From positions 62,001-126,000 of IMG/VR virus record IMGVR_UViG_3300030329_004647: a stretch of 64,000 nucleotides of DNA, one strand, 5' to 3'. Below are positions 2,766 through 63,204 of this stretch, piece by piece (position 1 is the stretch's first letter; each line of letters opens with the position of its first letter). The translations under genes were made by a program, and so were the position numbers. The notes beneath the pieces are model-generated. The model saw nothing but the letters and a program-made list of their open reading frames with translations, did not search any database and had not been told where the DNA came from.

Positions 2766-3056
2766 ATGAAAAAAATTAAACTAACAGAAGCAGATTTAGT
2801 TACTCTTGTAGAAAGAGTGATTAAAGAAGATGGACATACAGATATTCCATCTGCTATTAGAAAATGTAAACTAATAATGGATGATGCTGGAGATATCATG
2901 GAAAAGTTAATAGAACTAAGTGAAACTGGAGGAAGTCTTCCTTCTTGGTGGATGGATAAAGTAACTTTGGCAGCGGACTACCTCAACAAAGCTGATGACT
3001 ATATCAACACTACTAGTCATGTACACGAACAAACCAAAAAGAAAAATGTTAAGTAA
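2766..3056 (+). CDS. hypothetical virion-associated protein with class B leader (MKKIKLTEADLVTLVERVIKE)
   Basis: Leader motif; C-terminal LPSWWMDKVTLAADYL motif resembles a conserved T4-like phage small domain; TATTTATA at 2742-2749. Confidence 0.75.
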   Translation: MKKIKLTEADLVTLVERVIKEDGHTDIPSAIRKCKLIMDDAGDIMEKLIELSETGGSLPSWWMDKVTLAADYLNKADDYINTTSHVHEQTKKKNVK

Positions 3057-3138
3057 CATGACGGAAAAGTCTTGGGGCATACTTGTTATGAGTATTTTAT
3101 CTATAGCACTTATGGTCTATACTTGTATAACGTTGTAA
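3046..3138 (+). CDS. small membrane peptide (30 aa)
   Basis: Hand translation MLSNMTEKSWGILVMSILSIALMVYTCITL; fills the gap between neighbouring ORFs. Confidence 0.4.
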   Translation: MLSNMTEKSWGILVMSILSIALMVYTCITL

Positions 3139-3147
3139 ATAGAGTAT

Positions 3148-3444
3148 ATGAATCAACCTACATACCAAATTTTATTTTATTTATTAGTGTTTTTCCACCA
3201 CGTTTTTATAATACTAACAATATTAACACCGTTCTATGTTACTTTTAACGAACCTTTCTGGATATGGGTTCCTATTAACATATGGATTACACATCTAATG
3301 TTTTCCCCAGTTTTGGTTTGTCCTGCTACTATATGGGAAAACAGATTACGTAGAAGGTTAAACAAACCAGAAATTAAAACCTTTTTTCTTCACTATTATA
3401 TTAAACCCATAAAAAAACTATTAATTGAATGGGTGGTAAAATAG
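3148..3444 (+). CDS. DUF2784-like membrane protein
   Basis: HHVFIIL hydrophobic N-terminus and CPATIWENRLR motif. Confidence 0.65.
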   Translation: MNQPTYQILFYLLVFFHHVFIILTILTPFYVTFNEPFWIWVPINIWITHLMFSPVLVCPATIWENRLRRRLNKPEIKTFFLHYYIKPIKKLLIEWVVK

Positions 3445-3698
3445 CCATGATTATTATATTATTTGGTTCTTTTATTCTAATGTTTAAATTTATCTTCTGG
3501 ATTGTGGATATGTTTGATGGTGACTGAGAAACGCGACCCTATTCTGACAATTAGTCTAAAACCCTAAAAAAGAATTTTCAGAAAAATTTAGGAAAATACG
3601 CTATTTTTTATGAGTCCGGAACCGGAATCGACTTCGTCGTGACCCCCGACCCCCCTTTTTTTGGTTGATTATCTATAGTTGATTGATATTTATTTTAT

Positions 3699-5297
3699 AT
3701 GATTAATGAAGAGTTAAATAGAGTACGCTTTCTAATGGGTTATAATAAATCTAGACCCTTATTAGAACAAGAACGTTCTAACGTACAGGGTACCACTAAA
3801 CAAAACGCTGGTGCTTATGTGGGTGTTGCTTTTGAAGACTTAGCACAAATCATGAAAGACCGTGATGATAAGTTAATGTCTGGGGATGTATATACTGATT
3901 TACCACCAGAAGTGGATAACACAATTCCACCTGTTGTTCATGACGATAGTGACATAAGACCAACAAAAGACCTAGAGGATATAGATACCCATACACCTAT
4001 TGATGATATAATAACATATCCATTTGCTTCAGATTGTAATGACCTAAGTGCAATGCAGTTAGCAAAATGTTGTCATGGATTAGAATATGGTTTTTATAAT
4101 GATGACGGAATGGAGGAGTTTTGTTCTGATTATAGTCAATGTTGTGATAGAGTTCCCACAGATACTGATGATGACATAACATTAACTACAGATACACCTC
4201 CAGAACCTACACCTGAAGAACCAGATGATTTAGATGACGCTTTTCCACCACCACCAGTAACAGCAGAACAAATAGAATGCACAGATATGATGGGTGATTT
4301 AGATGGTGACGGACAAATAACACCATGGGATGTCTTTACCTATGTTAGTGTTGCATTAGGAAATATTAGTTTAGAAGATTCAGTTATACCATGTCCTACT
4401 AATATACCATGTGATTTTAGTGGTGAAGGGGATGTTATAGATAACATGATGGTACTATATGCTTACCAAAAAGGATTTCTTGACGAATTACCCCCATGTG
4501 GTGGTACAGATATAATTACCTGGGGATGTGGTACTCCTGGTGACCTAAATGGTGATGGTGAAGTTAATGCACAGGAAGCGTATATATTAAATGATATAGC
4601 TTCAGGTATTATATCACCATCAGAAATTCCATGTCCTACAAATCTTTGTGATTTTAGTGGAGTTGGGGATATGGAAGCAAATGCACAGATAGTACTAGAT
4701 TACGTTGCTGGTAATATTACAGAATTACCTCCTTGTGGTGGTTCAGTAATAGATGATGATACTGAAAATATTATACATTGGTGGACAACCCCTATTCTGG
4801 AAGATGTAGTTTTTGGTTGTATGGAAGGAGCTAATAACTCCAACCCTAATGAATTTTGGTCAGTTGTAGGTGAACCAACACCAGGACAATGGGTTACTAT
4901 TTTAGCTGACGACTTAGTTGGTACACCAGGATTTGACGATGAATCTGTATGTGTACAATACCAAGGAAGTGGAGATGTATCCGAGATGGAGAATAATGAA
5001 GAAATTATTAATGTTATCTGTTCTTCATCCGAATTTTCATTTGAAGGTCCGTTTAATTCATCACCATGTGAAGAAGAGGTACTATCTGGTCTTGAAAACC
5101 TGGTTAAGAAAGGTTCATACGAAAAACCATTAAAAAAGGACCCGTGTTGTAAAAAATGTAAAAATGGTAAATTTAGTGATAGTTGTTGTGATGATGAAGT
5201 TGGTGAACAAAGATGTGTTTATGACACTATAAGTGATTGTCAACTAAGAAAAAGACAAAATAAAGGTAAATGCAAAGGTTCGTCTAGAAAAAGATAG
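3699..5297 (+). CDS. Cys-rich acidic protein with two dockerin-like repeats and class A leader
   Basis: GDLDGDGQITPWD and GDLNGDGEVNAQE Ca-binding loops in a duplicated unit of about 72-76 aa; leader INEELNRVRFLMG...LLEQ. Confidence 0.8.
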   Translation: MINEELNRVRFLMGYNKSRPLLEQERSNVQGTTKQNAGAYVGVAFEDLAQIMKDRDDKLMSGDVYTDLPPEVDNTIPPVVHDDSDIRPTKDLEDIDTHTPIDDIITYPFASDCNDLSAMQLAKCCHGLEYGFYNDDGMEEFCSDYSQCCDRVPTDTDDDITLTTDTPPEPTPEEPDDLDDAFPPPPVTAEQIECTDMMGDLDGDGQITPWDVFTYVSVALGNISLEDSVIPCPTNIPCDFSGEGDVIDNMMVLYAYQKGFLDELPPCGGTDIITWGCGTPGDLNGDGEVNAQEAYILNDIASGIISPSEIPCPTNLCDFSGVGDMEANAQIVLDYVAGNITELPPCGGSVIDDDTENIIHWWTTPILEDVVFGCMEGANNSNPNEFWSVVGEPTPGQWVTILADDLVGTPGFDDESVCVQYQGSGDVSEMENNEEIINVICSSSEFSFEGPFNSSPCEEEVLSGLENLVKKGSYEKPLKKDPCCKKCKNGKFSDSCCDDEVGEQRCVYDTISDCQLRKRQNKGKCKGSSRKR

Positions 5298-5318
5298 TAA
5301 AAAATATATTTATATAAT

Positions 5319-5654
5319 ATGAGAAAACGATTACAAATATCTGAATCTGAAAAAACTAGAATACGAAAGCTTCACGAAGGAAAATTTGCTTTAGGGAGTA
5401 TGATATTCCAAGACGACCCCAAACCAGATAAAAAAGATTTTAAGGTTTATCCTGACCCAAACCTAGTACACGATTTATCAGATAAAGAAAGAAAAGAATT
5501 AGAAAAAAAATATAAAGAGTTTGACAAGTTTGTTTCACAAGCTAGAAAAAACTTTAGACCAGGTCATGACAAAGATTTTGAAACAGAATACCCTGTGGAT
5601 ACTAATGTGCCTGACCCATTTGTTGCAGACCGTGAATATAAAGATATAACTTAA
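5319..5654 (+). CDS. hypothetical protein with class A leader (ISESEKTRIRKLHE)
   Basis: Leader motif; TATTTATA at 5307-5314. Confidence 0.75.
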   Translation: MRKRLQISESEKTRIRKLHEGKFALGSMIFQDDPKPDKKDFKVYPDPNLVHDLSDKERKELEKKYKEFDKFVSQARKNFRPGHDKDFETEYPVDTNVPDPFVADREYKDIT

Positions 5655-5664
5655 TAAAAATATT

Positions 5665-5835
5665 ATGACTAGATTACAAAAACTTAAAAGAGAACACATA
5701 AAAAACGTAAATAAACTTCTAGACGAAGGACATAAAAAAGAAAATATCACTAAAAAAGAAGTAAAATTAAATCCAAGTGATAATGTTTCTGCCGCTTCAA
5801 AAGAATTTATTGATAAAATGAAAGGGTTATTTTAG
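5665..5835 (+). CDS. small hypothetical protein (56 aa)
   Basis: Hand translation MTRLQKLKREHIKNVNKLLDEG...KGLF; fills an intergenic gap. Confidence 0.55.
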   Translation: MTRLQKLKREHIKNVNKLLDEGHKKENITKKEVKLNPSDNVSAASKEFIDKMKGLF

Positions 5836-5870
5836 TACTTAACTTATATTTATAATAAAACATTAAAATT

Positions 5871-6320
5871 ATGATACTATCAGAACAAGAAAAAAATCGA
5901 ATTAGAGGCTTACATAGAGCTGGTTCAGTAATTAAAGAATCTCCGATGATGTACAAAGGACCTGGTTATACTGGAAAACAAAAAGAAGAAGGTTATAAAG
6001 AAGACGTAATAGGTGTGTATTCAGATTTTGACGACCAAAAAATGAAAACTAATATTCATGATGATATGGATGAGGGAATGCATGAAATGGAAGAAGGAAT
6101 GCATGAAATGGAAGAAGGAATGCATGAAGACATGCACGAAGACAGTGAAGGTGAAGAAACTTACAACTATGGAGAGGATGAAGGTGAAGATAGAAAAAGA
6201 GAAATGTCTATGGAAGACCGTATAGACGCTATCAAAGACCACTTAGACCATCTTAAAAAAGACATGGGTTATGATGAAGACCATGAAGATAGAGATGAGA
6301 AAGGTACTGATTTCGAATAA
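5871..6320 (+). CDS. acidic low-complexity protein with class A leader (ILSEQEKNRIRGLH...IKES)
   Basis: Leader; EGMHEME repeats; TATTTATA at 5847-5854. Confidence 0.8.
   Translation: MILSEQEKNRIRGLHRAGSVIKESPMMYKGPGYTGKQKEEGYKEDVIGVYSDFDDQKMKTNIHDDMDEGMHEMEEGMHEMEEGMHEDMHEDSEGEETYNYGEDEGEDRKREMSMEDRIDAIKDHLDHLKKDMGYDEDHEDRDEKGTDFE
6070..6130 (+). repeat. 21-bp tandem repeat encoding EEGMHEM (about 3 copies)
   Basis: ggaatgcatgaaatggaagaa repeated in frame. Confidence 0.85.
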
Positions 6321-6350
6321 ATCTTAATATCACATATACACAAATAAAAT

Positions 6351-6376
6351 AAAGGCCCATTTGGTGGCCTTTTTTT
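6351..6376 (+). terminator. intrinsic terminator
   Basis: AAAGGCC-loop-GGCCTTT followed by a T-run. Confidence 0.75.
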
Positions 6377-6414
6377 ATGCTAATTTTTATATTTATTTAT
6401 AAAGAAATACTATC

Positions 6415-7359
6415 ATGAATAATAAGTTTATCTTAAGTGAGTCAGAAAAAGAAAGGATTAGAAGTTTACATAACTTTAATTATAGACACGACCTGCAGGA
6501 AAATTTAGAAAGTGAACCAGGTGTTGAGGTTAAAAAAACCAATGACGGTGAAATAAACCAAATAACAATGGTAGTCGATAAAGACGCACAAATACCAAAA
6601 GAAGATGGTGTTGATGTAGACATTGAAAATATTGATGGTGAAAACGTAGAGGTTACAATAAGTACGGACCCAGAGTACTGGACAGATAAAGGAACATTAA
6701 CAGGTAAGGTTACACAGAATAAAAAACCATTACCATACGTAAACCTACAACTTATGACACCAAGTGGTGTAGCTACCAAATATGGTGCTGTAACAAACAC
6801 TGAAGGAAAATACACCATAGCCCCAATAGAAAAATTAGGAACATATGATATAATAGCTAGTTTTATTGGAAAAACAACACAAGTTATTAATGATATACCA
6901 ATAAAAGGTGGTAGAGTAACATTTATAGACTTCGACTTCGATGACGCTGAGAATTTAATAGACGCTGTAGAAATTGTAGCTAAAAAAGAAGAACCTATAA
7001 ACATGCTTAACATACAACTCGACAACGACTATATTGACAGCATCTTAAATAAAATAAAAACAGACGAGATATCCCCAATAATGGGTTACGACCTTATAGA
7101 TTTAGAAATCAGACAATGGAACTCTTTTGATAGAAACGAAAAAAGAAAAAATAAAGAGATGTATGATGGAATCATAAAAAAACTACAGGAAAAACTGAAG
7201 AAAGAAGGTAAAGGGTCCCTTAAAAAATATGAAAGAAAAATGTTATATGATGCTTTAATGGACAGTTTAGAATATGAAGAGGGAGCTGAAAATTATACAA
7301 ATGATGATGGTAGTATTGATATTGAAAAATATGAAGACTGGATGAGTTACTTAGATTAA
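6415..7359 (+). CDS. protein with class A leader and a carboxypeptidase-regulatory-like (SusC N-terminal extension-like) domain
   Basis: GTLTGKVT...PLPYVNL...TNTEGKYTI...ASFIG...LIDAVEIVAK pattern typical of Bacteroidota TonB-dependent receptor N-termini. Confidence 0.75.
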   Translation: MNNKFILSESEKERIRSLHNFNYRHDLQENLESEPGVEVKKTNDGEINQITMVVDKDAQIPKEDGVDVDIENIDGENVEVTISTDPEYWTDKGTLTGKVTQNKKPLPYVNLQLMTPSGVATKYGAVTNTEGKYTIAPIEKLGTYDIIASFIGKTTQVINDIPIKGGRVTFIDFDFDDAENLIDAVEIVAKKEEPINMLNIQLDNDYIDSILNKIKTDEISPIMGYDLIDLEIRQWNSFDRNEKRKNKEMYDGIIKKLQEKLKKEGKGSLKKYERKMLYDALMDSLEYEEGAENYTNDDGSIDIEKYEDWMSYLD

Positions 7360-7360
7360 T

Positions 7361-8008
7361 ATGAAAATTATACTAACAGAAACGGAGCTAATTAATGTTA
7401 TAACAAAAGTTATGATTGAACAGGCAAATGAATCCCCAACTCACGGGATTCAAGAAGATAGTATGAATAAGTTAAAAAAACATATTAGTATCTATTTTTT
7501 ATATCTCAATAGCATGTCTGACCTGGAAGCATACTGGCAGTCAATACAAGACGAAGGAGCTTTAACAGTTTATCTATATGGTAGAGAAAATCCAATTAAA
7601 ACAGATTTACATAGTGGTTTAAAGATTGCAGGTTTGGACAACCCCTTAAATGATAGAGGTAACAGAATGGATGCAAACACAGTTATATACACCCTGTTAA
7701 CAAATTATTTCCATAATGGAGGTAAAAATTGGAAAAGAGGTGATAATATAGAGTTGGTTCCAGCTTATTCCCACTCAGTAGACGTTACATTTGAAGAAGA
7801 TGTTGTTGAGTACGGTACAGTATTTTTGGATATATACACACCAACAGTAGAAAAAGCTCAAGAACTGGCATTAGGTCCTGACAATTATAACTTTGAAGTA
7901 GACCGACAAACTGATGACCATGATTATACTGGAGACCGTAGAAATCAGGAAATAACAGACCTACAAACTAATAAACACGAGTTAACTCCACAAATGTTTG
8001 GTTTTTAA
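7361..8008 (+). CDS. hypothetical protein with class B leader (MKIILTETELINVITKVMIEQ)
   Basis: Leader; closely follows the upstream ORF. Confidence 0.75.
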   Translation: MKIILTETELINVITKVMIEQANESPTHGIQEDSMNKLKKHISIYFLYLNSMSDLEAYWQSIQDEGALTVYLYGRENPIKTDLHSGLKIAGLDNPLNDRGNRMDANTVIYTLLTNYFHNGGKNWKRGDNIELVPAYSHSVDVTFEEDVVEYGTVFLDIYTPTVEKAQELALGPDNYNFEVDRQTDDHDYTGDRRNQEITDLQTNKHELTPQMFGF

Positions 8009-8601
8009 TGAAAATTTTAGAATCTGAAAAATATAGAATTAAAAAACTTTACAATATTTTAGAACAGACTGAAAAGGGTAGGTACTACCAAATGTTAACA
8101 CCCGAAATACAAAAAGCTTTAAAAGATTTATATGACAGATATGGTATAGATATAAAAGACAGTCATCTACAAAAAGAATTTGAACAAGAAGGACAATACA
8201 GAGAAGATGCTGGAGGAGTAAATCCTTATGCTAAAGAAGCTGTAGACCAACTAGTTAAAGACGCTCAAGAAAAATTTCCCAACATCCCTGAAGTACAAAA
8301 GGGTATTTTGTCGGGTTATAGAAGTTATGATAGACAAGTAGATAATTTTGGTAAAAAAGCTAAAAAAAGAGGTATAGAAGATACCCAGAAATATAACACC
8401 ATACCTGGATTTTCTGAACATCACACAGGTAAAGCGTTTGATATTTTTAGTCTAACTGATAGTTTTTGGAACAACAATCCAGATGTTAAAGATTGGGTTG
8501 CTGAAAACGCTGGTATGTATGGGTTTAATGTAACTTATAGTGCAGAAGGAACTCTACGAATGGAAGAACCATGGCATTTATATTATTATGGAATGGATTA
8601 A
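8008..8601 (+). CDS. M15 family (VanY-like) D,D-carboxypeptidase / cell-wall peptidase with class A leader
   Basis: SGYRSYDRQ, PGFSEHHTGKAFD (SxHxxGxAxD) and EEPWH motifs. Confidence 0.85.
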   Translation: MKILESEKYRIKKLYNILEQTEKGRYYQMLTPEIQKALKDLYDRYGIDIKDSHLQKEFEQEGQYREDAGGVNPYAKEAVDQLVKDAQEKFPNIPEVQKGILSGYRSYDRQVDNFGKKAKKRGIEDTQKYNTIPGFSEHHTGKAFDIFSLTDSFWNNNPDVKDWVAENAGMYGFNVTYSAEGTLRMEEPWHLYYYGMD

Positions 8602-9149
8602 CCTATTTCTATATCAAAAGCTTTTCCAGTAGTATCACCAAAACCATCACCATTTAATGGTTCACCATCATAAGTTAATTCACTTATGATTTCGTAAATA
8701 TTTTCAGGAGTCTCTATCTGTAAGGCCTTTAGTTTTAATTTTTTAATATCAAAATCCTCATCATCATTGATTTCGAAATCACAACTATCCATAGTACCCT
8801 TTTCCCAAGTAACAAAACTAACCATAGTTCCACCACTAAACTTAGGCCAACTGTGTTCATTACTCAACTCAACGGTGGCATCACCAGTCTCAAACTCAAA
8901 TTCATCATCATTTATAGTAACATAAATCTTACATCCGAGATTACCACCCATAAAATGACCCAGGTCATCACAATCATACCACATTCCACGGTCCTCCAAC
9001 ACATCCTCTAAGTTATTAGTTAAAACAGACTCAATGTCTTCATCATTTTCTTTACAATATGATTTAACTTTATTTAGTTCGTCATCCGTAAATTTACTTC
9101 TTGTTATTTCATGGCCTGAACCCCCTAATATTATTTCTACTTTTTTCAC
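8598..9149 (-). CDS. hypothetical protein, acidic
   Basis: 183-aa ORF; stop codon overlaps the M15 gene stop (TTAA). Confidence 0.75.
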   Translation of the reverse strand: MKKVEIILGGSGHEITRSKFTDDELNKVKSYCKENDEDIESVLTNNLEDVLEDRGMWYDCDDLGHFMGGNLGCKIYVTINDDEFEFETGDATVELSNEHSWPKFSGGTMVSFVTWEKGTMDSCDFEINDDEDFDIKKLKLKALQIETPENIYEIISELTYDGEPLNGDGFGDTTGKAFDIEIG

Positions 9150-9250
9150 TTTTTTGTTTTTTTATCTAACTTTTCTATATTACGTAAAAGGTCTTTATTT
9201 GGTGAACTAAATAACTCTATTATAAATCTTATAAACCACATAATAATTAT

Positions 9251-55401: not shown

Positions 55402-56823
55402 ATGTCAAAAGAATCTTTAATAGAACAAGCACTGCTCGAGGCTGAACAGTTGGAAAATACTATGAGGTCTAACGCAAAAGAAATACTTGCTTCAACAATG
55501 AAGGAAGAAATTGGAGAGTTAGTACAAGAATCGTTAGCTGAGAAAGACGATTACCTTAAGGAGCAAACAGAAGAGGACATTGAAGACGAGACTTTAGATT
55601 TTGAAGGGTCAGATGATGACGCTGAAGAAATGGAAATGTCTGTCGAAATTCCTGATTTAGAAGATGAGATGGAGGACGATGAACTCGCACCTCTTGATTT
55701 AACCTCAGCAACTGACGACGAAGTCATAAAAGTATTTAAAGCCATGGGTGATGAAGATGGTATCATTGTTAAAAAAGACGAAGATGAAATTTCATTACAA
55801 GATGGTGAAGATGAGTACTTAATAAAATTAGAAGAAAACAAAAATATGAAAACAAAAAAATCTAATTTAAAAGAAATGGAAAAAGAAATGGAAGTTGACG
55901 AATTAATGATGGATGAGGAATCACCAGAAACTGATGAAACAACTGAAATGGAAGAAGAAGTTATGTATGAAATCGAATTATCTGATGAAGATGAGGATAA
56001 ATCAGAAGAAACTAAAGAAGACGCACACGAAGAAGAGATGGAAGAAGGTCACATGCACCACAAATTTAAGCAAGGTTACGACGCTAGACAAGATGACTCA
56101 CTGGGAGATTTAGATGGACCAGAAAGTAGTTATTCACAATCTTTTGCAGACCGTAGACGTGAAAGAGAAGGTATGAGAAAATCTGCCAGAAGAACTCCAG
56201 ACATGTTAAACGCGGGTAAAAAAGAAGTGGGTGAAATGGTTCGCCAAAATAACCTAGGTCAAAAAGTCCATGCTGGTAACAGAAGTAATTCTTACAACAA
56301 AGCTGCTAGAAAAAAATCTGGAATTCATTTACCAGAATCTAGAAGAAAGAAAGCTAGAATTTCTGAAAGAGCTAGAAAGGTTGCACAAAAATCTTCAGTA
56401 TCTAAAAACTACGGTCAACTTAAAGAAGAAATTACTGGATTAAAATCTAAGAATTTTGAATATAAGAAGGCTTTATCGTCATTTAGGGACAAATTAAACG
56501 AGGTAGGAGTATTCAATTCCAACTTAGCTTACGCAACTAGATTGTTCACTGAACATTCTACAACTAAACAGGAGAAGATTAATATTCTTAAAAGATTTGA
56601 CAACGTCCAATCTTTAAAAGAATCTAAATCACTCTATAAGGTAATCAAAGAGGAGTTATCGACTGTTAAATCTCCGAAAACTAAAAAAACAATTTCGGAA
56701 GCAGTTGAAAAACGAATCAACAAATCCCCAAGAAGCGGAAGTAAGAGTAAACTAACTGAAAGTAAAGTTTACGAAAACCCACAATTCTCAAGGATTAAAG
56801 ACTTAATTAATAAAATAAACTAA
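55402..56823 (+). CDS. prohead core / scaffold protein (T4 gp22-like)
   Basis: Position between protease and MCP; acidic coiled coil with many [LI]-x-E sites; LNEVGVFNSNLAYATRLF. Confidence 0.8.
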   Translation: MSKESLIEQALLEAEQLENTMRSNAKEILASTMKEEIGELVQESLAEKDDYLKEQTEEDIEDETLDFEGSDDDAEEMEMSVEIPDLEDEMEDDELAPLDLTSATDDEVIKVFKAMGDEDGIIVKKDEDEISLQDGEDEYLIKLEENKNMKTKKSNLKEMEKEMEVDELMMDEESPETDETTEMEEEVMYEIELSDEDEDKSEETKEDAHEEEMEEGHMHHKFKQGYDARQDDSLGDLDGPESSYSQSFADRRREREGMRKSARRTPDMLNAGKKEVGEMVRQNNLGQKVHAGNRSNSYNKAARKKSGIHLPESRRKKARISERARKVAQKSSVSKNYGQLKEEITGLKSKNFEYKKALSSFRDKLNEVGVFNSNLAYATRLFTEHSTTKQEKINILKRFDNVQSLKESKSLYKVIKEELSTVKSPKTKKTISEAVEKRINKSPRSGSKSKLTESKVYENPQFSRIKDLINKIN

Positions 56824-56837
56824 AAAAATAAAAAAAC

Positions 56838-58670
56838 ATGGGAGCATTATTAGAATCCGGAATGGTTGGTAACATTGGGTTAAAACACCTAAAAGTTATC
56901 AAAGAGGATACAATTAATAAATGGGACAAATTAGGTTTCCTTGATGGCCTTAAAGGTCATGGAAGAGAAAACATTGCTCAGCTTTTTGAAAATCAGGCAA
57001 CTCATTTAATCAATGAGGCGACTGCAGCTGACAACTCAGGTTCTTTCGAAACTGTAGTTTTCCCTATTATTAGAAGAGTATTCTCAAAATTATTAGCTAA
57101 CGAAATCGTATCTGTACAGGCAATGAACTTACCAATTGGTAAATTATTCTACTTCGTACCAAAAGTATCAAGTAGAGTTGGTGAGGGTGGTATGTATGAA
57201 GGTTTCGCTCCATTTGGAGCACCAGGTGCACCGGCAACACAAACGCCAAGTTCACCTACATCAGCTACAACAATAAACTTATATGACAACTTCTACGCAA
57301 CTAACGCACCAATGGGTGCTGAAGATGGTCTTTATGACATCTCAAAAGGTTCGTACTCAGGTTATATCACAACTAATCTACAAGTTATGGACTGGAACGC
57401 TTCAGCTCGTACTTTAGGTTATGCTGCGACTAACTCTACAACTGTAACGTCATTAACATCAACAACTGATTGTTTAAAATCTGTGATTATTGGAGTTACT
57501 GGATTCCAGTCAACAGGTGAAGGTAAATTAATCGGACCGATGGGTAACGAAATAGATACTGAAGATTTCTTATCTTCTTTAACTTTAATTACTGAAAACG
57601 CTACAACTTGTAAGTCAGGTTCAACTAACTATAACGCTGGTGACAACATGTTATTCAGAGTTGTTACTCAAAAATACGGTAGGTCAATTGCGAACCCAAC
57701 AAGTTCGAAAACATCTACAGCTTTCCCTGGTGGAGACTTTGACAGTATTTGTGATGTAACAGGTACAATTTACTTAGAGGCTGACCTTTCGTGTCCAGCT
57801 TGTATTAATTGTGACTCTGTAGACGGATATGTTTGTTCATACTACGCAAATCGTGAGTTCCAAAATGAAACATCACCATTTAGTGCAGCGTGGAGAGTTT
57901 ACAAAGACCTAGAATTTGAAGAAAAAATGGGTGAAGTTTCTTTCGACCTTGAATCTGTTACAGTTTCGGTTACTGAAAGAAAATTAAGAGCTCAATGGTC
58001 ACCAGAGCTTGCACAAGACGTGTCAGCATTCCATAATATCGACGCTGAAGCTGAGTTAACTGCTTTACTTTCTGAAGAAGTTGCTGCTGAAATCGATAGA
58101 GAAATCTTAAGAGACCTTAGAAAAGGAGCAGCTTGGGATTTAAGATGGGATTACAATGGATGGAAGAGATTCCAATCAGGTCAAGCACCATATACTCAAA
58201 AAGACTGGAATCAAACGTTAATCACTGCGGTTAACCAAATTTCAGCTCAGATTCACAAATCTACATTGAGAGGTGGAGCTAACTGGATTGTTTGTTCTTC
58301 TGAGGTATCTGCAATATTTGATGACTTGGAGTACTTCCACGTGTCAAATGCAGCACCAGACCAAGACCAATACAACATGGGTATTGAAAAAGTTGGAACT
58401 CTAGGAGGTAGATATACTGTATATAGAGACCCTTATTTCCCACCTAACCAATTATTACTTGGTCACAAGGGAACGTCATTACTTGACACAGGGTATGTTT
58501 ACGCACCGTATGTACCGTTACAATTAACACCAACAATGTATAATCCATTTAACTTTACACCAATCAAGGGTATCATGACTAGATACGCTAAGAAAATGGT
58601 TAACAACCGTTTCTATGGTAGAGTTACTATCGATGGAGTTAAAACATTCGATGTTAAAGAGTTAAGATAA
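56838..58670 (+). CDS. major capsid protein (T4 gp23-like)
   Basis: IVSVQAMNLP, RKLRAQWSPELAQD, EIDREILRDL, YAPYVPL, GIMTRY. Confidence 0.96.
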   Translation: MGALLESGMVGNIGLKHLKVIKEDTINKWDKLGFLDGLKGHGRENIAQLFENQATHLINEATAADNSGSFETVVFPIIRRVFSKLLANEIVSVQAMNLPIGKLFYFVPKVSSRVGEGGMYEGFAPFGAPGAPATQTPSSPTSATTINLYDNFYATNAPMGAEDGLYDISKGSYSGYITTNLQVMDWNASARTLGYAATNSTTVTSLTSTTDCLKSVIIGVTGFQSTGEGKLIGPMGNEIDTEDFLSSLTLITENATTCKSGSTNYNAGDNMLFRVVTQKYGRSIANPTSSKTSTAFPGGDFDSICDVTGTIYLEADLSCPACINCDSVDGYVCSYYANREFQNETSPFSAAWRVYKDLEFEEKMGEVSFDLESVTVSVTERKLRAQWSPELAQDVSAFHNIDAEAELTALLSEEVAAEIDREILRDLRKGAAWDLRWDYNGWKRFQSGQAPYTQKDWNQTLITAVNQISAQIHKSTLRGGANWIVCSSEVSAIFDDLEYFHVSNAAPDQDQYNMGIEKVGTLGGRYTVYRDPYFPPNQLLLGHKGTSLLDTGYVYAPYVPLQLTPTMYNPFNFTPIKGIMTRYAKKMVNNRFYGRVTIDGVKTFDVKELR

Positions 58671-58691
58671 TTATCGCTACTCTATATTATG

Positions 58692-58720
58692 AAAAACCCC
58701 TCTTCGGAGGGGTTTTTTTT
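58692..58720 (+). terminator. intrinsic terminator after MCP
   Basis: AAAAACCCCTC-TTCG-GAGGGGTTTTTTTT. Confidence 0.93.
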
Positions 58721-58759
58721 ATGCATCTTAAAGTATTTATATTAAAAGAACTTAAAATT

Positions 58760-61327
58760 ATGCCACAATTTAATATATCATCCGAAGAAAGGAATAGAAT
58801 TAGAGGTTTACACATTACAGAATCTAAAGATAAAAGAATCACTTCAGTCTTAAATGAAGCTAAGGCTTTAGAAGGTTGGTTCGGAAAAATGTTTGGTGGG
58901 AAAAAAAGAAAAGAAGACATATACAACATTCTTAAAGCCGGTGTACAAATTGGTAGTCCCCCACTCTATTTAGAAGATAGAAAAGAAAACCCTCCATATT
59001 ATACTGAAGAAGAAATTAAAAGATTCGCTAATTTCATGAATAAGTTAGATAGAGTTTTTGTTAATGAAAAAAAGGTAATAGAACTATTAAGAACAGGTGT
59101 GGGATTAGGACTAGAGGAATTGGATATATTAACAAGGATTTTATACGCGTCATCTACTGACCCAGAAAAACCACAAAATTTTACTGACGTGTTGGTGGCA
59201 TCAGGAGCATTTAATGAAAGAGAAAGTTACAATCTAGATAGAATATTAGATACTAATCTATCAGATTTAATGAAAAAAACAAAAAAACAAGATATTAAGA
59301 AACGAGACTGTATCGATACAAATCCATTTGATAAAGAGAATGAACCAAGAGAGTGGGCATGGTGTGACAACAAACTTAACCCAGAGGGTGATGTGCAAGA
59401 AACAGAAGATAGTTACGATTATCAGTTAAGTGAAGTTAATAGAATACGCGAGATAATGGGCCTTAAAATATTGACGGAACAAAAAGTAGGTAGTGTTATT
59501 ATGGTAGATGGGAGAGAAATGGAAGTTGTAGATTATATAAAACAAGAATTACCACCAATAAACGTAGGACAACAATTTGGGTCTGGACTGTATAATGTGA
59601 GTGGTGAGGTTAAAAAATCTTTAGATGGTCTAGTTAATAAAATGAAAAATTTCTTTAATAGAAAAGAAGTACAGGGAATAGTTTTTGATATAGACCTAGA
59701 AGGTGGAGCTTCACTAGTTCCAATCTCAGATGCGTTAGCAAGAAAATACGGTATAAGTACTAGTCTGTCTGATGCAGATAGAAATAAGTGGTTAGCTGGA
59801 AAAAGAGCTTCAGAAGTTAAAAAATATTTGGAAGCACAATTAGGTCAACTAGGAAACGTACAAATACCAGAACCAACAGTTACATTAGGTACAACAAAAT
59901 GGGATAAAAATAAAGGAGTTAATCACAAAGACTATACAGAAGAACAGTTTATGAATATTACTGTTAAAGCTGCGGGTAAAAGACAAGTATTAGAGGCTTT
60001 ACCAGCATTCTGTGAAAAAGGATTTGAACCAGAACAGGGAGGATTAGGTGACCCAAAAAGAGCATATAAGGTTTATAAAGGAAGAGGAAAAAAATTAAAT
60101 TTAGGTGCGGGAGAAGGTAAAATATGTTTATCATTTGACGCATTAACCGTTCCAGATATGTTTGAATTAACCTATAACGGAAAAACATATAGAAGTATGA
60201 ACTCAAAGACAGGTAAAGCTGGATTCATATCAGGTAAGTATGATGAGATATCTGAAGAAGAGTTAGATAAATTTACAGCTATGTTACCCGAAATACAAGA
60301 TGAAATAGCTAAATTAACTGGTGATATACAATTAGCACAAGACGCTTTAGAGTCTGTAGGGCCTGAACAAGAAGCAAAATTAGAAGAAATACTCCTAAAA
60401 CAACAAGAAGAATTAGAAAAAAGTATAGAAGATACCAACAGAAAAATGAAAAAGTATGGGTATAACTTATCAATACCAGTAAAAAATCATAGAAGTAGAA
60501 AAAAATGGGATGATTATATTATGCATTATGGCGACCCTAATACAGGATACCCAAATGCTGTAACACCTAATTGGTATTGGGAAGAAGGTCAATATACGAT
60601 AGATGACACTCCTTTCGCTGGACCTGGTAGTGATAAAAGACCCGAAGAATTTTTTAATATGGCCGACGAAGGAGAAGTAAATGGTGAGTGGTTTAATCGT
60701 TTCTTTAACAAATATAGATATGATAACTCTAAAAAAATTAAAAGAAGTACAGGGTTTAAAACATTGTGGGCAAATAGACCAACTAATAAAGATTGGAAAA
60801 AAGATGATGTTGCAGCCTTTTTCCTTGGTATGAGAAGATTAGAAAAACAACTATTTAGAAATCAAGACGCAAAAAGAGACGAACTAGCTAAGTCTATTAA
60901 AAAAATGAAAAGAGATTACGAAAATAGAATTGAAAACTTATCTAGTAATATTGAAAAAGAAACTCGAAGATTACAAAATGAGTTAAATAAAAATATTAAA
61001 ACACTTAATGATTCTAAAGGAGAAGCTGAACTGTCTAAGAAAATGACAGAGTATAAACTAAGAACAGGTACTAAAGGAATGTACAAGTTTGATGAGTTAT
61101 TAAAAGAAATATTAGCTGATTCGTACGGTGGTAGAAAAAATGTTCCAGATATTATAGGACCTAAAGGTACTATTACTTTTGATAAAGTATTAGGGAAAAA
61201 TGAAGCTTATCTACAAGTTATAGCTCCTATAGGTGGTACATTATGGGCGGTACAAGTAGGTTGTGGTGACAAATGTAAGGGATTAGTTGATAATCCAGTT
61301 ACATATGATAGGGGAACACAAGCTTAA
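58760..61327 (+). CDS. large protein with two class A leaders and an OmpA-like domain
   Basis: MPQFNISSEERNRIRGLHITES; internal LSEVNRIREIMGLKILTEQ; FGSG...IDLEGGAS...NKWLAGKRASEVKKYL. ATG 58760 preferred over 58721. Confidence 0.75.
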   Translation: MPQFNISSEERNRIRGLHITESKDKRITSVLNEAKALEGWFGKMFGGKKRKEDIYNILKAGVQIGSPPLYLEDRKENPPYYTEEEIKRFANFMNKLDRVFVNEKKVIELLRTGVGLGLEELDILTRILYASSTDPEKPQNFTDVLVASGAFNERESYNLDRILDTNLSDLMKKTKKQDIKKRDCIDTNPFDKENEPREWAWCDNKLNPEGDVQETEDSYDYQLSEVNRIREIMGLKILTEQKVGSVIMVDGREMEVVDYIKQELPPINVGQQFGSGLYNVSGEVKKSLDGLVNKMKNFFNRKEVQGIVFDIDLEGGASLVPISDALARKYGISTSLSDADRNKWLAGKRASEVKKYLEAQLGQLGNVQIPEPTVTLGTTKWDKNKGVNHKDYTEEQFMNITVKAAGKRQVLEALPAFCEKGFEPEQGGLGDPKRAYKVYKGRGKKLNLGAGEGKICLSFDALTVPDMFELTYNGKTYRSMNSKTGKAGFISGKYDEISEEELDKFTAMLPEIQDEIAKLTGDIQLAQDALESVGPEQEAKLEEILLKQQEELEKSIEDTNRKMKKYGYNLSIPVKNHRSRKKWDDYIMHYGDPNTGYPNAVTPNWYWEEGQYTIDDTPFAGPGSDKRPEEFFNMADEGEVNGEWFNRFFNKYRYDNSKKIKRSTGFKTLWANRPTNKDWKKDDVAAFFLGMRRLEKQLFRNQDAKRDELAKSIKKMKRDYENRIENLSSNIEKETRRLQNELNKNIKTLNDSKGEAELSKKMTEYKLRTGTKGMYKFDELLKEILADSYGGRKNVPDIIGPKGTITFDKVLGKNEAYLQVIAPIGGTLWAVQVGCGDKCKGLVDNPVTYDRGTQA

Positions 61328-61851
61328 GGGTGAACCAAAATTAATACAGGGTAAGATGTTTGAGCGTAACGTGCTTGAATTACACTAACCGCTCCAATCG
61401 TTAAATTTCCACGACCCTCCAAATCAAATAACATAGCTTTTCTATGTCCTGGAGAATTAATCCAGTCATTAACTACTTGACGACATTCCTTTTCTAAATC
61501 AAGAGGCTCGTCAGTCCATGAATACAAAGGCAATCCAGCCATACATTCGGTACCCCAAGAATATGTACCACAATATTTTTTAATTCTCATTTGAGGGTCA
61601 TTTATTTCTTCATGTCCTTTTACATCAACAGTTTCACTATGTGAAAAATTTACTTCTTTATATGTCATGTAACTTGCGTGGTGATAAGCAGCTTTATAAG
61701 CGTCATTAGACCACTCTACGGCCTCCAAACCCTGTGATACCCTATATTCGTTTACCATTCTAAAAATAATTTGTTCTGCCTCACCTATACGTTGTTGTCC
61801 GTAAGAAGTAAAAGTTAAAATAGTAAGTAAGATTGTTATTAGTTTTTTCAT
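61324..61851 (-). CDS. secreted CAP (SCP-like) domain protein
   Basis: Signal peptide; IFRMVNEYRVSQGL, HHASYM, FSH, WINSPGHRKAML. Confidence 0.88.
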   Translation of the reverse strand: MKKLITILLTILTFTSYGQQRIGEAEQIIFRMVNEYRVSQGLEAVEWSNDAYKAAYHHASYMTYKEVNFSHSETVDVKGHEEINDPQMRIKKYCGTYSWGTECMAGLPLYSWTDEPLDLEKECRQVVNDWINSPGHRKAMLFDLEGRGNLTIGAVSVIQARYAQTSYPVLILVHP

Positions 61852-61855
61852 ACTA

Positions 61856-61886
61856 CAAATATAATAAATTTATTTTAAACTACAAA
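61856..61886 (-). promoter_or_regulatory. Bacteroidota sigma-A-type promoter (likely leaderless)
   Basis: TTTG, N19, TATATTTG, TAGT, ATG. Confidence 0.8.
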
Positions 61887-61944
61887 GATAATTGTAAGTA
61901 ATTATACGAGTTATTTTAAAGATAGTTTCAGATATTTATAATGT

Positions 61945-63204
61945 ATGAAGAGTAATTTATTATCTGAAATTAATCGTTTAAGGGGCATTATGGGTTTAAA
62001 GTTAATCCAAGAACAAGTCCAGTCACCACCTTATGACCTATATACCCAATGGGAAGGTTCTGGTGGAAAAGTTATAACATCTAAGGAATGGAGTGATAAA
62101 AAAATATTTAAAGCAGGTTTTATAAATTACATAGGTCCTTTTGGAGATAGAGGTTATGTTGTTTTAATGCCTGGTACAAAATATGTAGATGGAATTGGTG
62201 AGATATCTTCACCTGTTGTAAATTCTAAATACCCTCCTATCGGAGGAAATGTGGACAACCAATTATTTAAAATAGAAGATAGAAAATTTAGACCTGGTCA
62301 AAATAAAGTGTATGGGGGTGATTTGAAGTGGGCTGAAGGAAACCCACAAATTGACTTTATGAAATATCAAAATAACGATTTATGGGAGTTAGGCAGTCAA
62401 GCTAAAGCTTTACAATCTGATATGAATAGAGGTGGTGGTCAGACTAAAACTAGATTTCATTTTTTAGCTTACTCTCAAAGAACTAATGGTAACTTAAGAA
62501 TTCTAAACATAAATATTAGATTAAAAAACATAAAAGAATTAGAAGCAGAGGGTAAAACAGACAATACAAAAAAAGGTACTTTAAGCATTAACAATTATGT
62601 AAAACAACGTGGTGGTAATGCATGGCACTTAGAATATGGTTCAGCACCGTTAGCGACTTATGGACCTGGAAACATTAGTATAGAGGAAGATTTACCAGAA
62701 TTTGTTACCGACGAATACCAGTTTGATGCTGGTGAAAATTTTGATTTCGATTCTGCAGTTCTAACTCAATTAGCTAAAGACGCCATCAAAGAAAAAATTA
62801 TTGACGCTATAAATGAATTAGGAGAATATAAAAGTGCTTATTTAAAAGAATTAGGTAAAAAACCCGTAATAATCACAGCTTACTCTTCTATCGACGCAGA
62901 TTCTGAAACACCAGGTGGTGGTGGTGATTTTGGACCATGTCAAAGTATTAAAAAATCAGGAAAACGAAAAGATTATAATAAATGCCTTAGTCAATATAGA
63001 GCTAATACAGTTGTAAAACATCTCCAAGATAATTATTCGGATATATTTGGTAATGTTAAATTAAAAGGTATTGGAGGTGGTGAAAACCCATCTAAAAATA
63101 GTTGGAAACCAGGAAAAAAGAATCATGACTCTAAAACAACCCAAAAAGACCGTAAGTTTACAATTAAATTACCAGGATTTACTATACGAAGAAAAGTAGG
63201 TTAA
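61945..63204 (+). CDS. OmpA-like C-terminal domain protein with class A leader
   Basis: LLSEINRLRGIMGLKLIQEQ; FDFDSAVL...ITAYSSID...YNKCLSQYRANTVVKHL...GGGE...DRKFTI. Confidence 0.85.
   Translation: MKSNLLSEINRLRGIMGLKLIQEQVQSPPYDLYTQWEGSGGKVITSKEWSDKKIFKAGFINYIGPFGDRGYVVLMPGTKYVDGIGEISSPVVNSKYPPIGGNVDNQLFKIEDRKFRPGQNKVYGGDLKWAEGNPQIDFMKYQNNDLWELGSQAKALQSDMNRGGGQTKTRFHFLAYSQRTNGNLRILNINIRLKNIKELEAEGKTDNTKKGTLSINNYVKQRGGNAWHLEYGSAPLATYGPGNISIEEDLPEFVTDEYQFDAGENFDFDSAVLTQLAKDAIKEKIIDAINELGEYKSAYLKELGKKPVIITAYSSIDADSETPGGGGDFGPCQSIKKSGKRKDYNKCLSQYRANTVVKHLQDNYSDIFGNVKLKGIGGGENPSKNSWKPGKKNHDSKTTQKDRKFTIKLPGFTIRRKVG

What the first reader, a model, noticed from the sequence alone, without database searches (positions are those of the whole stretch)
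2766..63204. A shared N-terminal leader on about 20 unrelated proteins: candidate capsid-cargo addressing system
Seen in sequence: unrelated ORFs begin with the same short helices. Class A, [IL][ST]ExExxRI[RK]xL[HM] or ExNRIxxLM: 3699, 5319, 5871, 6415, 8008, 16998, 21338, 24140, 33971, 58760, 61945, and a divergent copy at 12874. Class B, KIxLTExxLxxL[IV]xx[VI]: 2766, 7361, 10877, 16674, 22958, 40970. Short class, [IL]xx[IL]LxE: 18750, 26836, 34777, 46607. Nearly all end in [LI]-x-E (LLEQ, IKES, LQEN, ILEQ, VKEQ, LTEQ, VNEE, ITES, IQEQ), after which a separate domain starts: DERA, M15 peptidase, OmpA-like, SusC-NTE-like, dockerin-like. Established: T4 internal proteins carry an N-terminal capsid-targeting sequence that gp21 removes after [LI]-x-E, and a gp21-like protease is encoded here. 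Inference: this phage uses a modular leader grafted onto enzymes to load a large, diverse payload into the head, mature it, and possibly inject it. None of the genes behind sigma-A promoters carries the leader.
Basis: partly seen in the sequence, partly recalled or inferred. Interest (0 to 1): 0.92.

Follow-up and report, generated by a model that had tools for sequence, protein, structure and literature searches.

The report
Shared leader peptide on phage proteins
Seventeen otherwise unrelated late proteins of this T4-like phage of a Bacteroidetes-type host start with the same 20-35-residue peptide, which ends in the kind of site that T4's head protease cuts. It is most likely a tag that loads them into the capsid, like T4's capsid-targeting sequence but unrelated to it in sequence and used far more widely.

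Summary
The core observation is real. Eleven + strand ORFs begin with a class A leader, one of them carries a second copy inside, and six begin with a class B leader. In a six-frame scan nothing else in the 64 kb scores above background. The four "short class" ORFs and the minus-strand ORF at 12874 are not supported.

The leaders are conserved as protein, not as DNA. They are followed by [LIVM]-x-E at residue 19-23. The domains behind them share no detectable similarity; they include DERA, a VanY/M15 peptidase, a CarboxypepD_reg domain and an OmpA-like domain.

Most leader genes sit behind a late-promoter-like motif, RTATTTATW, that is shared with the head genes. None sits behind the Bacteroidetes -7 box.

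The same leaders mark about 200 N-termini in related IMG/VR contigs of up to 326 kb. They also match 1,394 protein clusters in a 1.84-billion-protein library. Leaders are swapped, placed in tandem and fused between cargoes.

A gp21-type protease with its catalytic His and Ser, a gp20-type portal and a gp23-type capsid protein are encoded in the window.

Best reading, about 0.55: a capsid-targeting propeptide system that works like the T4 CTS. It is a new variant of a known kind. No virion proteomics exist, so packaging, cleavage and injection are all inferred.

The parts
3699..5297 (+). Class A (A2 subtype) leader protein, 532 aa. Leader about 3699-3767, ending LLE|Q. Acidic cargo with a sub-threshold dockerin-like hit.
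5319..5654 (+). Class A leader protein, 111 aa. Leader about 5319-5378. No known domain.
5871..6320 (+). Class A leader protein, 149 aa. Leader 5871-5939, ending IKE|S. Very acidic cargo.
6415..7359 (+). Class A leader protein, 314 aa. Leader 6415-6501, ending LQE|N. CarboxypepD_reg domain at residues 94-185.
7361..8008 (+). Class B leader protein, 215 aa. Leader 7361-7420, ending MIE|Q. In an operon behind 6415.
8008..8601 (+). Class A leader protein, 197 aa. Leader 8008-8064, ending ILE|Q. VanY/M15 D-Ala-D-Ala carboxypeptidase domain at residues 71-195.
2766..3056 (+). Class B leader protein, 96 aa. Leader 2766-2828, ending IKE|D.
10877..11203 (+). Class B leader protein, 108 aa. Leader 10877-10942, ending VKE|Q.
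16674..16991 (+). Class B leader protein, 105 aa. Leader about 16674-16724. In an operon behind the thioredoxin-like ORF 16374.
16998..17294 (+). Class A leader protein, 98 aa. Leader 16998-17066, ending VKE|A. The 11 residues after the putative cut nearly copy the capsid protein's own post-cleavage N-terminus.
21338..22123 (+). Class A leader protein, 261 aa from this start. Leader 21338-21403, ending VTE|Q. The weakest class A member.
22958..23374 (+). Class B leader protein, 138 aa. Leader about 22958-23008. Very acidic cargo.
24140..26836 (+). Class A (A2) leader protein, 898 aa. Leader 24140-24208, ending LTE|Q. The cargo is an ORFan: the only hit among 5.8 billion proteins is a 99%-identical copy of itself.
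33971..34777 (+). Class A (A2) leader protein, 268 aa. Leader 33971-34030, ending VNE|E. Deoxyribose-phosphate aldolase (DERA) TIM barrel from about residue 25.
40970..43648 (+). Class B leader protein, 892 aa. The weakest class B member. First [LIV]xE at residue 16, and LLE|Q at residue 52.
58760..61327 (+). Class A leader protein, 855 aa, directly after the capsid gene. Leader 58760-58822, ending ITE|S. It is a fusion of two leader-cargo units.
59426..59479 (+). Internal second class A leader copy, ending LTE|Q, at residues about 222-241 of the 855-aa protein. The domain behind it matches stand-alone leader proteins of related phages.
61945..63204 (+). Class A (A2) leader protein, 419 aa. 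Leader 61945-62013, ending IQE|Q. C-terminal OmpA-like peptidoglycan-binding domain. Its homologues in relatives carry the long canonical class A leader.
54587..55303 (+). Prohead serine protease of the T4 gp21 / S77 family. The catalytic His (LNHP) and Ser (SSRG) are present.
55402..56823 (+). Candidate scaffold (gp22 position). Extremely acidic middle part, 24 [LIVM]xE sites, no family hit.
56838..58670 (+). Major capsid protein of the gp23 family. The first 60 residues (propeptide) are nearly invariant and end in an invariant LINE, followed by a variable stretch.
50805..52640 (+). Portal protein (T4 gp20 family).
2741..61940 (+). Scattered late-promoter-like motif RTATTTATW, 30 copies in the window, 29 of them on the + strand. 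Most lie 4-40 nt upstream of starts of leader genes and head genes, for example 2741, 3686, 5306, 5846, 6389, 10851, 21322, 22936, 24117, 33948, 40942, 49010, 52640, 53897, 54580, 55353, 58733 and 61932.

Best explanation
The two leader classes are branches of one family of capsid-targeting propeptides.

Proposed mechanism, with each step marked shown or inferred:
1. Late in infection the leader-bearing proteins are made together with the head proteins. The shared promoter-like motif is shown; the timing is inferred.
2. The N-terminal helix of about 15 residues starts with a [ST]-E-x-[DE] cap and is not packed against the cargo fold. It docks onto the scaffolding core of the prohead, so the cargo is enclosed when the gp23-type shell closes. 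This step is inferred by analogy with the T4 CTS and the first 30 residues of P1 DarB.
3. The gp21-type protease then cuts after the conserved [LIVM]-x-E that follows the helix at fixed spacing. This frees the mature protein, and the leader leaves the head. The site and the protease gene are shown; the cleavage is inferred.
4. The payload mixes conserved members (DERA) with fast-turnover ORFans. It is rich in peptidoglycan-binding and peptidoglycan-cutting modules. Many members therefore probably leave through the tail at infection and act on the cell envelope. This step is inferred.
5. Class A may have arisen as a copy of the last part of the capsid protein's own propeptide together with its cleavage junction. 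The evidence for this is weak.
For: - Specificity and position: only N-termini score in six frames. In 1.83 Mb of related contigs, 198 of 200 class A hits and 102 of 109 class B hits have a Met within 15 residues upstream. In 1.84 billion representative proteins, 1,394 match at E <= 0.001, and nearly all of the best 150 match at residues 1-40.
- Selection acts on the protein: Ser TCN/AGY, Arg AGA/CGN and Leu CTN/TTR codon switches occur at conserved positions.
- Modularity: the mature parts are unrelated. There are 74 unrelated cargo clusters among 203 leader proteins. Two of these clusters pair an A-leader protein with a homologous B-leader protein. One further protein carries A then B in tandem. 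The cargo family of 61945 has a short A2 leader here and the long canonical leader in relatives. ORF 58760 is a fusion that keeps an internal leader.
- Cleavage-type site: [LIVM]xE lies at residue 19-23 and is enriched over controls. In the best 150 database hits, 132 of 148 have the site 11-12 residues after the helix core. In the DERA family E20 is nearly invariant, while residues 21-28 vary in sequence and length.
- Detached helix: AF2 gives helix 2-16 with pLDDT below 50, a linker, then a confident DERA barrel (TM 0.92 to solved DERAs).
- T4-type head machinery is in the window: gp20 portal, S77 protease with His and Ser, gp23 capsid protein.
- The capsid protein's own propeptide ends in an invariant LINE followed by a variable stretch. 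ORF 16998 copies that junction (BLAST E = 3e-5, different codons). A profile-profile comparison of class A with the capsid propeptide aligns in the same register (E = 0.008).
- Regulation: the late motif directly precedes 14 of 17 leader genes against 10 of 52 others (p = 5e-6). It also precedes the terminase, protease and scaffold genes. For class A in relatives the figure is 69% against 35% (p = 2e-12).
- Precedent: the T4 CTS is a 10-20-residue N-terminal propeptide removed by gp21, and it is the only part conserved among diverse internal proteins (PMC3012670, PMC9026906, PMC5694885). The first 30 residues of P1 DarB direct a reporter protein into the capsid (PMC9024508).
- Negative control: 150 kb of Flavobacterium phage immuto (capsid protein 40% identical) has no such N-terminal leaders.
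Against: - There are no virion proteomics, N-terminal sequences or structures for any member of this uncultured clade. Packaging, cleavage and ejection are unobserved.
- The leader has no sequence similarity to the T4 CTS.
- The mature parts are mostly acidic (pI 4.1-5.6), unlike the basic, DNA-associated T4 internal proteins.
- A cytoplasmic-type metabolic enzyme (DERA) is the most conserved leader-bearing protein found, with no obvious job inside a capsid.
- [LIVM]xE is common in this composition: 2.4% of positions and 56% of control N-termini.
- Gln follows the Glu in about 90% of class A leaders, and it has not been shown that a gp21-type enzyme accepts that.
- Class B is sometimes internal or C-terminal. 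In relatives it is not enriched for the late motif (19% against 35%). For the main family this is because the gene sits inside an operon.
- The resemblance to the capsid propeptide is weak outside ORF 16998 (hhalign probability 5%).
- Seventeen or more cargo species from 64 kb is a heavy load for one capsid.
Confidence: 0.55

Rival explanations
1. The leader is a docking helix for some other late assembly, and it is not removed. Candidates are the tail or baseplate, the capsid exterior, or a cytoplasmic complex.
For: The data show directly only a portable helix on late proteins. Class B copies occur at C-termini of small proteins next to the capsid gene and inside some proteins. Many cargoes bind or cut peptidoglycan, as tail-associated lysins do.
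Against: A Glu preceded by an aliphatic residue at fixed spacing, followed by a variable linker, is what a cleaved propeptide looks like. The junction in ORF 16998 copies the capsid protein's maturation junction. A fusion protein keeps the full leader plus site internally. Seventeen different proteins sharing one docking site on a tail is hard to picture.
Confidence: 0.15
2. The leader does target the prohead, but most bearers are auxiliary core or scaffold proteins. These would be degraded and expelled during maturation, not delivered to the host.
For: Several small bearers are extremely acidic, with D+E of 31-36%, like the scaffold candidate. In T4, gp22, gp67 and gp68 are core proteins that gp21 destroys (PMC5694885).
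Against: Folded enzymes and peptidoglycan-binding domains (DERA, VanY, OmpA-like, PG_binding_1, LysM, SLT) make little sense as disposable scaffold. The cargo set turns over rapidly between close relatives, as counter-defence or entry factors do and essential scaffolds do not.
Confidence: 0.12
3. The leader is an export or lysis-timing signal that brings wall-acting proteins to the periplasm at the end of infection.
For: The cargoes are enriched in peptidoglycan-related domains and are expressed late.
Against: No leader has a hydrophobic run longer than 5 residues, so it is not a Sec, Tat or signal-anchor sequence. The leaders are highly charged. DERA and many acidic ORFans are not envelope proteins. 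Sec-type signal peptides do occur in the window, but on other, early-promoter genes.
Confidence: 0.05
4. The leader is a client tag for the phage's own chaperones, which fold late proteins or hold them inactive.
For: The window encodes a full Hsp70 and a ClpB/ClpA-type double AAA+ protein, and the Hsp70 gene lies just upstream of a class B gene.
Against: No known Hsp70 or Clp recognition motif resembles it. This reading does not explain the fixed Glu site, the link to the capsid junction, or the leader-cargo fusion. The chaperone genes are not behind the late motif.
Confidence: 0.03
5. The pattern is chance, a paralogous gene family, or a nucleotide-level signal at the 5' end of the genes.
For: The composition is AT-rich and rich in Lys, Glu, Ile and Leu, which makes short helical motifs common.
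Against: Background six-frame scores stay below 9 bits against 14-33 bits for members. An unrelated Flavobacterium phage has none. The mature parts are unrelated. Conserved residues use different codon families.
Confidence: 0.01

Closest known systems
T4 capsid targeting sequence (CTS) of internal proteins IPI, IPII, IPIII and Alt, removed by gp21
   Same: It is a short N-terminal peptide and the only part shared by otherwise diverse proteins. It is followed by [L/I]-x-Glu. The same genome has a gp21-family protease and gp20/gp23-type head genes. The genes are late. The cargo genes turn over quickly between relatives (PMC3012670, PMC9026906, PMC5694885).
   Different: There is no sequence similarity. 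The leader here is 20-35 residues and has two parts, a helix and then a site 11-12 residues later. T4's is 10-20 residues. The window alone has 17 bearers and databases hold more than a thousand clusters, against a handful in T4. The cargoes here are mostly acidic and include enzymes and wall-binding domains, not small basic proteins. Nothing has been shown experimentally.
N-terminal packaging signal of phage P1 DarB
   Same: It is an N-terminal signal of fewer than 30 residues that is enough to bring a foreign protein into a myovirus head (PMC9024508).
   Different: It is described for one protein, in a phage with a different protease and a scaffold-less capsid precursor. It is not a family-wide sequence motif.
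Propeptides of head and ejection proteins in giant phages (phiKZ, 201phi2-1, SPN3US)
   Same: Many internal head proteins are processed after Glu by a gp21-related protease. Paralogues can share identical N-termini. The internal payload is large (PMC5694885, PMC9026906).
   Different: Those propeptides are mostly longer than 100 residues and are not one shared motif across unrelated proteins. The cleavage motif there is [S/A/G]-x-E.
Encapsulin cargo-loading peptides and microcompartment encapsulation peptides (from general knowledge, not tested here)
   Same: They are short terminal helices joined by a flexible linker, and they address unrelated enzymes to the inside of a protein shell. For encapsulins that shell has the HK97 fold.
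   Different: Those peptides are not cleaved. Their shells carry no DNA and are not injected. No encapsulin or microcompartment shell gene was seen among the window proteins scanned.

Membership tests
T4-type capsid-targeting propeptide system | A short N-terminal peptide shared by proteins that are otherwise unrelated | tested here: met
   17 proteins have no similarity among their mature parts. Relatives add 74 unrelated cargo clusters.
T4-type capsid-targeting propeptide system | The peptide ends in the protease motif: an aliphatic residue, any residue, then Glu | tested here: met
   Present in 17 of 17, with E mostly at residue 19-23, and enriched over controls. Present in 132 of 148 database leaders at fixed spacing. 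Only the motif is shown, not the cleavage.
T4-type capsid-targeting propeptide system | A gp21 (S77) prohead protease with catalytic residues, and T4-type head genes, in the same genome | tested here: met
   Peptidase_S77 E = 4e-25. His and Ser align to T4 gp21 (5JBL). Portal_T4 and Gp23 families are present.
T4-type capsid-targeting propeptide system | Sequence homology of the leader to the T4 CTS | tested here: not met
   The T4 ipI, ipII and ipIII N-termini, fetched from NC_000866, score below 0 bits with all four leader models.
T4-type capsid-targeting propeptide system | The leader is sufficient to bring a foreign protein into the head, and it is removed there | not testable with these tools
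   This needs a cultured phage, leader-reporter fusions and virion mass spectrometry.
T4-type capsid-targeting propeptide system | The cargoes are small basic DNA-associated proteins | tested here: not met
   The mature parts are 75-876 residues long. Thirteen of 17 have pI 4.1-5.6. Some relatives do carry Lys-rich tails after class B.
Sec/Tat or signal-anchor export signal | A hydrophobic core of about 10 or more residues after a positively charged N-terminus | tested here: not met
   The longest hydrophobic run in any leader is 5 residues.
Double-glycine (bacteriocin-type) leader | The leader ends in Gly-Gly or Gly-Ala | tested here: not met
   The alignments of 37 class A and 34 class B leaders have no conserved Gly-Gly. 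The conserved end is [LIVM]-x-E.
Double-glycine (bacteriocin-type) leader | A C39 peptidase-ABC exporter encoded nearby | tested here: inconclusive
   No C39 peptidase appeared among the window proteins scanned, but not every ORF was scanned.

The most novel reading that the evidence does not exclude
The leader is a sequence-defined, transferable address label. An uncultured, globally distributed clade of T4-like phages, some with contigs above 300 kb, would use it to load a large and fast-evolving set of more than a thousand protein families into the capsid for delivery. The set runs from a conserved aldolase to wall-binding and wall-cutting modules. The label would have arisen by copying the capsid protein's own scaffold-docking helix and maturation junction, so that cargo enters the head by imitating the capsid subunit's propeptide.
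Probability: 0.25. Interest if true: 0.8.

Novelty: new variant of a known kind. Interest (0 to 1): 0.66.

Why it matters
If the leader really addresses proteins to the capsid, it is a sequence rule for reading a phage's packaged and injected protein set straight from its genome. That would work for a large group of uncultured aquatic phages where no proteomics exist.

It would show that the T4 way of loading cargo has been reinvented with a different peptide and scaled up by one to two orders of magnitude. It would flag hundreds of ORFans as probable first-minute effectors or entry factors. It would also offer a compact tag for packaging foreign proteins into phages of Bacteroidetes.

The possible descent of the tag from the capsid protein's own propeptide would give a simple evolutionary route for how such tags arise.

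Tried and rejected
- Near-identity search of 22 kb against GenBank phages found nothing. The closest isolates by capsid protein are only 40-45% identical.
- Flavobacterium phage immuto (150 kb scanned) and a 40-kb region of the 642-kb record LR756502 have no leaders. The motif is therefore specific to this clade, not general to Flavobacterium phages or huge phages.
- PHROGs and Pfam give nothing for most cargoes.
- No Pfam model matches the leaders themselves, and no paper in the library prints these peptide strings.
A degenerate DNA pattern was used instead.
- A search for homologues of the 898-aa and 98-aa cargoes found only copies of themselves. The planned test of co-variation between ORF 16998 and the capsid N-terminus was therefore impossible. 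A regular-expression search for other copies of that junction found none.
- Class B against the capsid propeptide segment KVIKED gives hhalign E = 0.057 over 9 columns, which is not significant.
- The hydrophobic moment of the leaders is only slightly above that of control N-termini (p = 0.03). Amphipathicity is not claimed as evidence.
- The AF2 model of ORF 61945 is poor overall (mean pLDDT 41). Only its C-terminal domain is usable.
- One strong database hit is a false positive: a 549-aa protein with 11 tandem repeats that resemble the helix core.


Full report
**What is in the window**

The window has about 32% G+C and carries roughly 70 genes of 60 codons or more.

It holds a T4-type head module: large terminase (49023), gp20-family portal (50805), S77 gp21-family prohead protease (54587), a very acidic scaffold candidate (55402) and a gp23-family major capsid protein (56838). 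The protease keeps the catalytic His and Ser when aligned to T4 gp21, PDB 5JBL.

Other genes include Hsp70, a ClpB-like double AAA+ protein, PEP synthase/PPDK, an SprT-like protein, a dTDP-sugar epimerase and a staphylococcal-type nuclease. There is also a tmRNA.

Sigma-70-type promoters are not enriched. The Bacteroidetes -7 box TAnnTTTG precedes ten genes, most of them on the minus strand. This points to a host in the Bacteroidetes.

The nearest isolates by capsid protein are only 40-45% identical: an uncultured 484-kb phage, Microcystis phage Mel-JY01 and Flavobacterium phage immuto. IMG/VR holds at least 598 contigs with capsid proteins related to this one; the 80 closest are 65-100% identical.

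**Check of the observation**

- Profile models give 12.5-35 bits to members and at most 6.7 bits to anything else in 83,515 six-frame residues.
- Leave-one-out within the window recovers 7 of 11 class A and 5 of 6 class B members above all background.
- The members it misses (3699, 24140, 61945, 21338, 40970) are recovered once the models include leaders from related contigs. All 17 then score 14.5-32.7 bits, against 8.6 bits or less for the rest.
- The best "background" hit is itself a leader: an internal copy at about 59426-59479 inside ORF 58760.
- The four short-class ORFs and the minus-strand ORF at 12874 do not score above background. I treat them as unsupported. Orthologues of 46607 do keep a short N-terminus ending L-[IL]-x-E-G.

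Conservation is at protein level. Conserved Ser, Arg and Leu positions switch between codon families. The mature parts share no BLAST similarity.

Domain calls:
- VanY/M15, DeoC and CarboxypepD_reg hold.
- PAP2 is present in the unsupported short-class ORF 18750.
- The dockerin hit is sub-threshold.
- OmpA-like is weak in Pfam. It is echoed by a fold match of the C-terminal domain to OmpA, OprF and Pal peptidoglycan-binding domains (TM 0.64-0.67), from an overall poor model.

**Anatomy of the leader**

Class A has three parts. First comes a [ST]-E-x-E cap. Then comes a helix with the core [KR]-x-R-I-[RKL]-x-L-[HM]. After 8-12 more residues comes an aliphatic residue, any residue, then Glu, usually followed by Gln.

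Class B is K-I-x-L-T-E-x-[DE]-L-x-x-[LI]-[IV]-x-x-V-[ILV]-x-E, so its helix ends directly in the same kind of site. A profile-profile comparison aligns the first 17 columns of A and B (E = 4e-4). The two classes are therefore probably branches of one family.

In the window the Glu sits at residue 19-23 in most members. [LIVM]xE with E at residue 12-45 is present in 17 of 17 leader proteins against 29 of 52 others. [LIVM]xEQ is present in 8 of 17 against 1 of 52 (p = 2e-5).

No leader has a hydrophobic run longer than five residues. This excludes an ordinary export signal.

For the DERA-like protein, an AF2 model built on 40 homologues shows helix 2-16 with pLDDT below 50, a linker, and a confident TIM barrel. 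The barrel superposes on solved deoxyribose-phosphate aldolases at TM 0.92 and about 32% identity. The leader is thus an appendage outside the enzyme fold.

**Beyond the window**

In 1.83 Mb of related IMG/VR DNA, class A gives 200 hits, of which 198 have a Met within 15 residues upstream. Class B gives 109 hits, of which 102 are N-terminal. The rest use alternative starts or are internal or C-terminal. Contigs carrying the leader reach 326 kb.

The 211 distinct leader proteins fall into 74 unrelated cargo clusters. Several cases show that leader and cargo are separable:
- Two clusters pair an A-leader protein in one phage with a homologous B-leader protein in another.
- One protein carries A then B in tandem.
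- The cargo family of 61945 has a short A2-type leader here and the long canonical leader in relatives.
- Residues 263-475 of the window's 855-aa protein align to residues 50-247 of stand-alone leader proteins of 373-390 aa. The window protein is therefore a fusion of two leader-cargo units, and it kept the second leader and its site internally.

A profile of class A run against 1.84 billion representative proteins finds 1,394 proteins at E <= 0.001. Nearly all of the best 150 match at residues 1-40. Of the 148 in which the helix core could be located, 132 have the aliphatic-x-Glu site 11-12 residues after it, with Gln next in 118.

The DERA-like protein has 3,688 homologues of the same length. 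All of the sample I inspected carry the leader. E20 is nearly invariant, and residues 21-28 vary in both sequence and length. By contrast, the 898-aa and 98-aa cargoes are ORFans, and the genes just after the capsid gene differ even between close relatives.

Recognisable cargo domains are dominated by the cell wall: PG_binding_1, LysM, PG_binding_3, SLT, VanY and OmpA-like.

Flavobacterium phage immuto, whose head module is also of the T4 type, has no such N-terminal leaders in 150 kb.

**Regulation**

RTATTTATW occurs 30 times against 15.8 expected, and 29 copies are on the + strand. It directly precedes 14 of 17 leader genes against 10 of 52 others (p = 5e-6). The remaining leader genes lie in operons behind such a gene.

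The same motif precedes the terminase, protease, scaffold and other head-module genes.

No leader gene has TAnnTTTG, against 10 of 52 others (p = 0.058 on its own).

In relatives, 69% of class A genes have the motif against 35% of other ORFs (p = 2e-12). Class B genes do not (19%). For the main class B family this is because the gene follows another coding sequence directly.

That the motif is a late promoter is inferred from the genes it precedes. It was not measured.

**Link to capsid maturation**

Alignment to mature T4 gp23 places the expected cut in the capsid protein somewhere around residues 45-60.

In 41 related capsid proteins the first 60 residues are almost invariant and end in an invariant L-I-N-E. 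A variable stretch follows, and then the conserved core. This is the signature of a propeptide junction.

ORF 16998 repeats this junction after its class A helix. The 11 residues after its V-K-E match those after the capsid's I-N-E (BLAST E = 3e-5), but with different codons, so this is not a recent DNA copy.

A profile-profile comparison of class A with the capsid propeptide aligns in the same register (E = 0.008, probability 5%). This suggests that class A imitates the end of the capsid propeptide. It is a lead, not a result.

**Most likely mechanism, and what is known**

In T4, all internal head proteins join the scaffolding core through an N-terminal CTS of 10-20 residues, which gp21 removes after L/I-x-E. 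The CTS is the only conserved part of a diverse, fast-evolving set of internal proteins, and it can carry foreign proteins into the head (PMC3012670, PMC9026906, PMC5694885). The first 30 residues of P1 DarB do the same for a reporter protein (PMC9024508).

The system here matches that architecture in every feature that sequence can test. It fails sequence homology: the T4 IP N-termini score below zero with all leader models. It also fails the basic-cargo feature.

I therefore file it as something that works like a T4 CTS but is not a member of that sequence family. It is a new variant of a known kind, longer and in two parts, with two classes and a far larger and more enzymatic cargo set. Confidence is about 0.55, because nothing about packaging or cleavage has been observed.

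**Rivals**

- A docking tag for another assembly (0.15).
- Disposable core proteins that are not delivered to the host (0.12).
- An envelope-export or lysis signal (0.05).
- A chaperone client tag (0.03).
- Chance, paralogy or a DNA-level signal (0.01).

**Verdict**

- Observation: largely confirmed, for 17 proteins plus one internal copy.
- Interpretation: plausible and the best available, but unproven.
- Interest: 0.66.

Noticed in passing
window 28124-28528 (-): A phage-encoded tmRNA. ARAGORN and Rfam RF00023 agree (107.9 bits, full length). The predicted tag peptide has 22 residues.
   Followed up: partly
window 36675-38699 (-) and 39041-40897 (+): The phage carries its own ClpB/ClpA-like double AAA+ protein and a full-length Hsp70 (846 bits). 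Neither has a leader or the late motif.
   Followed up: partly
window 13811-16282 (-): A complete PEP synthase / pyruvate phosphate dikinase-type enzyme (PPDK_N, mobile domain, PEP-utilizers_C) encoded by the phage.
   Followed up: no
window 16998-17294 vs 56838-58670: After its leader, the 98-aa ORF repeats the 11 residues that follow the capsid protein's putative maturation site. The codons differ, which suggests selection on the peptide around the cut. The ORF is otherwise an ORFan.
   Followed up: yes
window 47635-48996 and orthologues in L004-L186: A conserved 453-aa protein just upstream of the terminase gene has a very short N-terminus, variable in sequence, that ends in a conserved [LI]-x-E-A-P. 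In some relatives it begins with a class A2-like M-L-N-E-I-N-R-R. It may be another processed head protein.
   Followed up: partly
L033:2199.., L018:5737.., L022:8445.., L054:4812.., L067:9402..: Class B-like helices occur at the C-terminal end of small proteins encoded next to the capsid gene in relatives. The module is therefore not strictly N-terminal.
   Followed up: partly
L036, L008, L039, L020, L012, L079 (class B genes on the strand opposite the capsid gene): In a family of proteins of about 85 residues, the class B leader is followed directly by a run of 8-15 lysines. These resemble basic DNA-condensing internal proteins.
   Followed up: no
window 18223-18675 (-), 61324-61851 (-), 63201-63785 (-): Small proteins with classic Bacteroidetes-style signal peptides, each behind a TAnnTTTG box. 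They are early secreted or lipoprotein-like phage proteins interleaved with late leader genes.
   Followed up: no
protein P0136: A 549-aa SET-domain-like protein with 11 tandem repeats resembling the class A helix core scored 65 bits. It is a false positive, and it shows that the helix core alone is not fully specific.
   Followed up: yes
window 1-2000: A stretch with only short, overlapping ORFs and no family hits. Coding content is low compared with the rest of the window.
   Followed up: no
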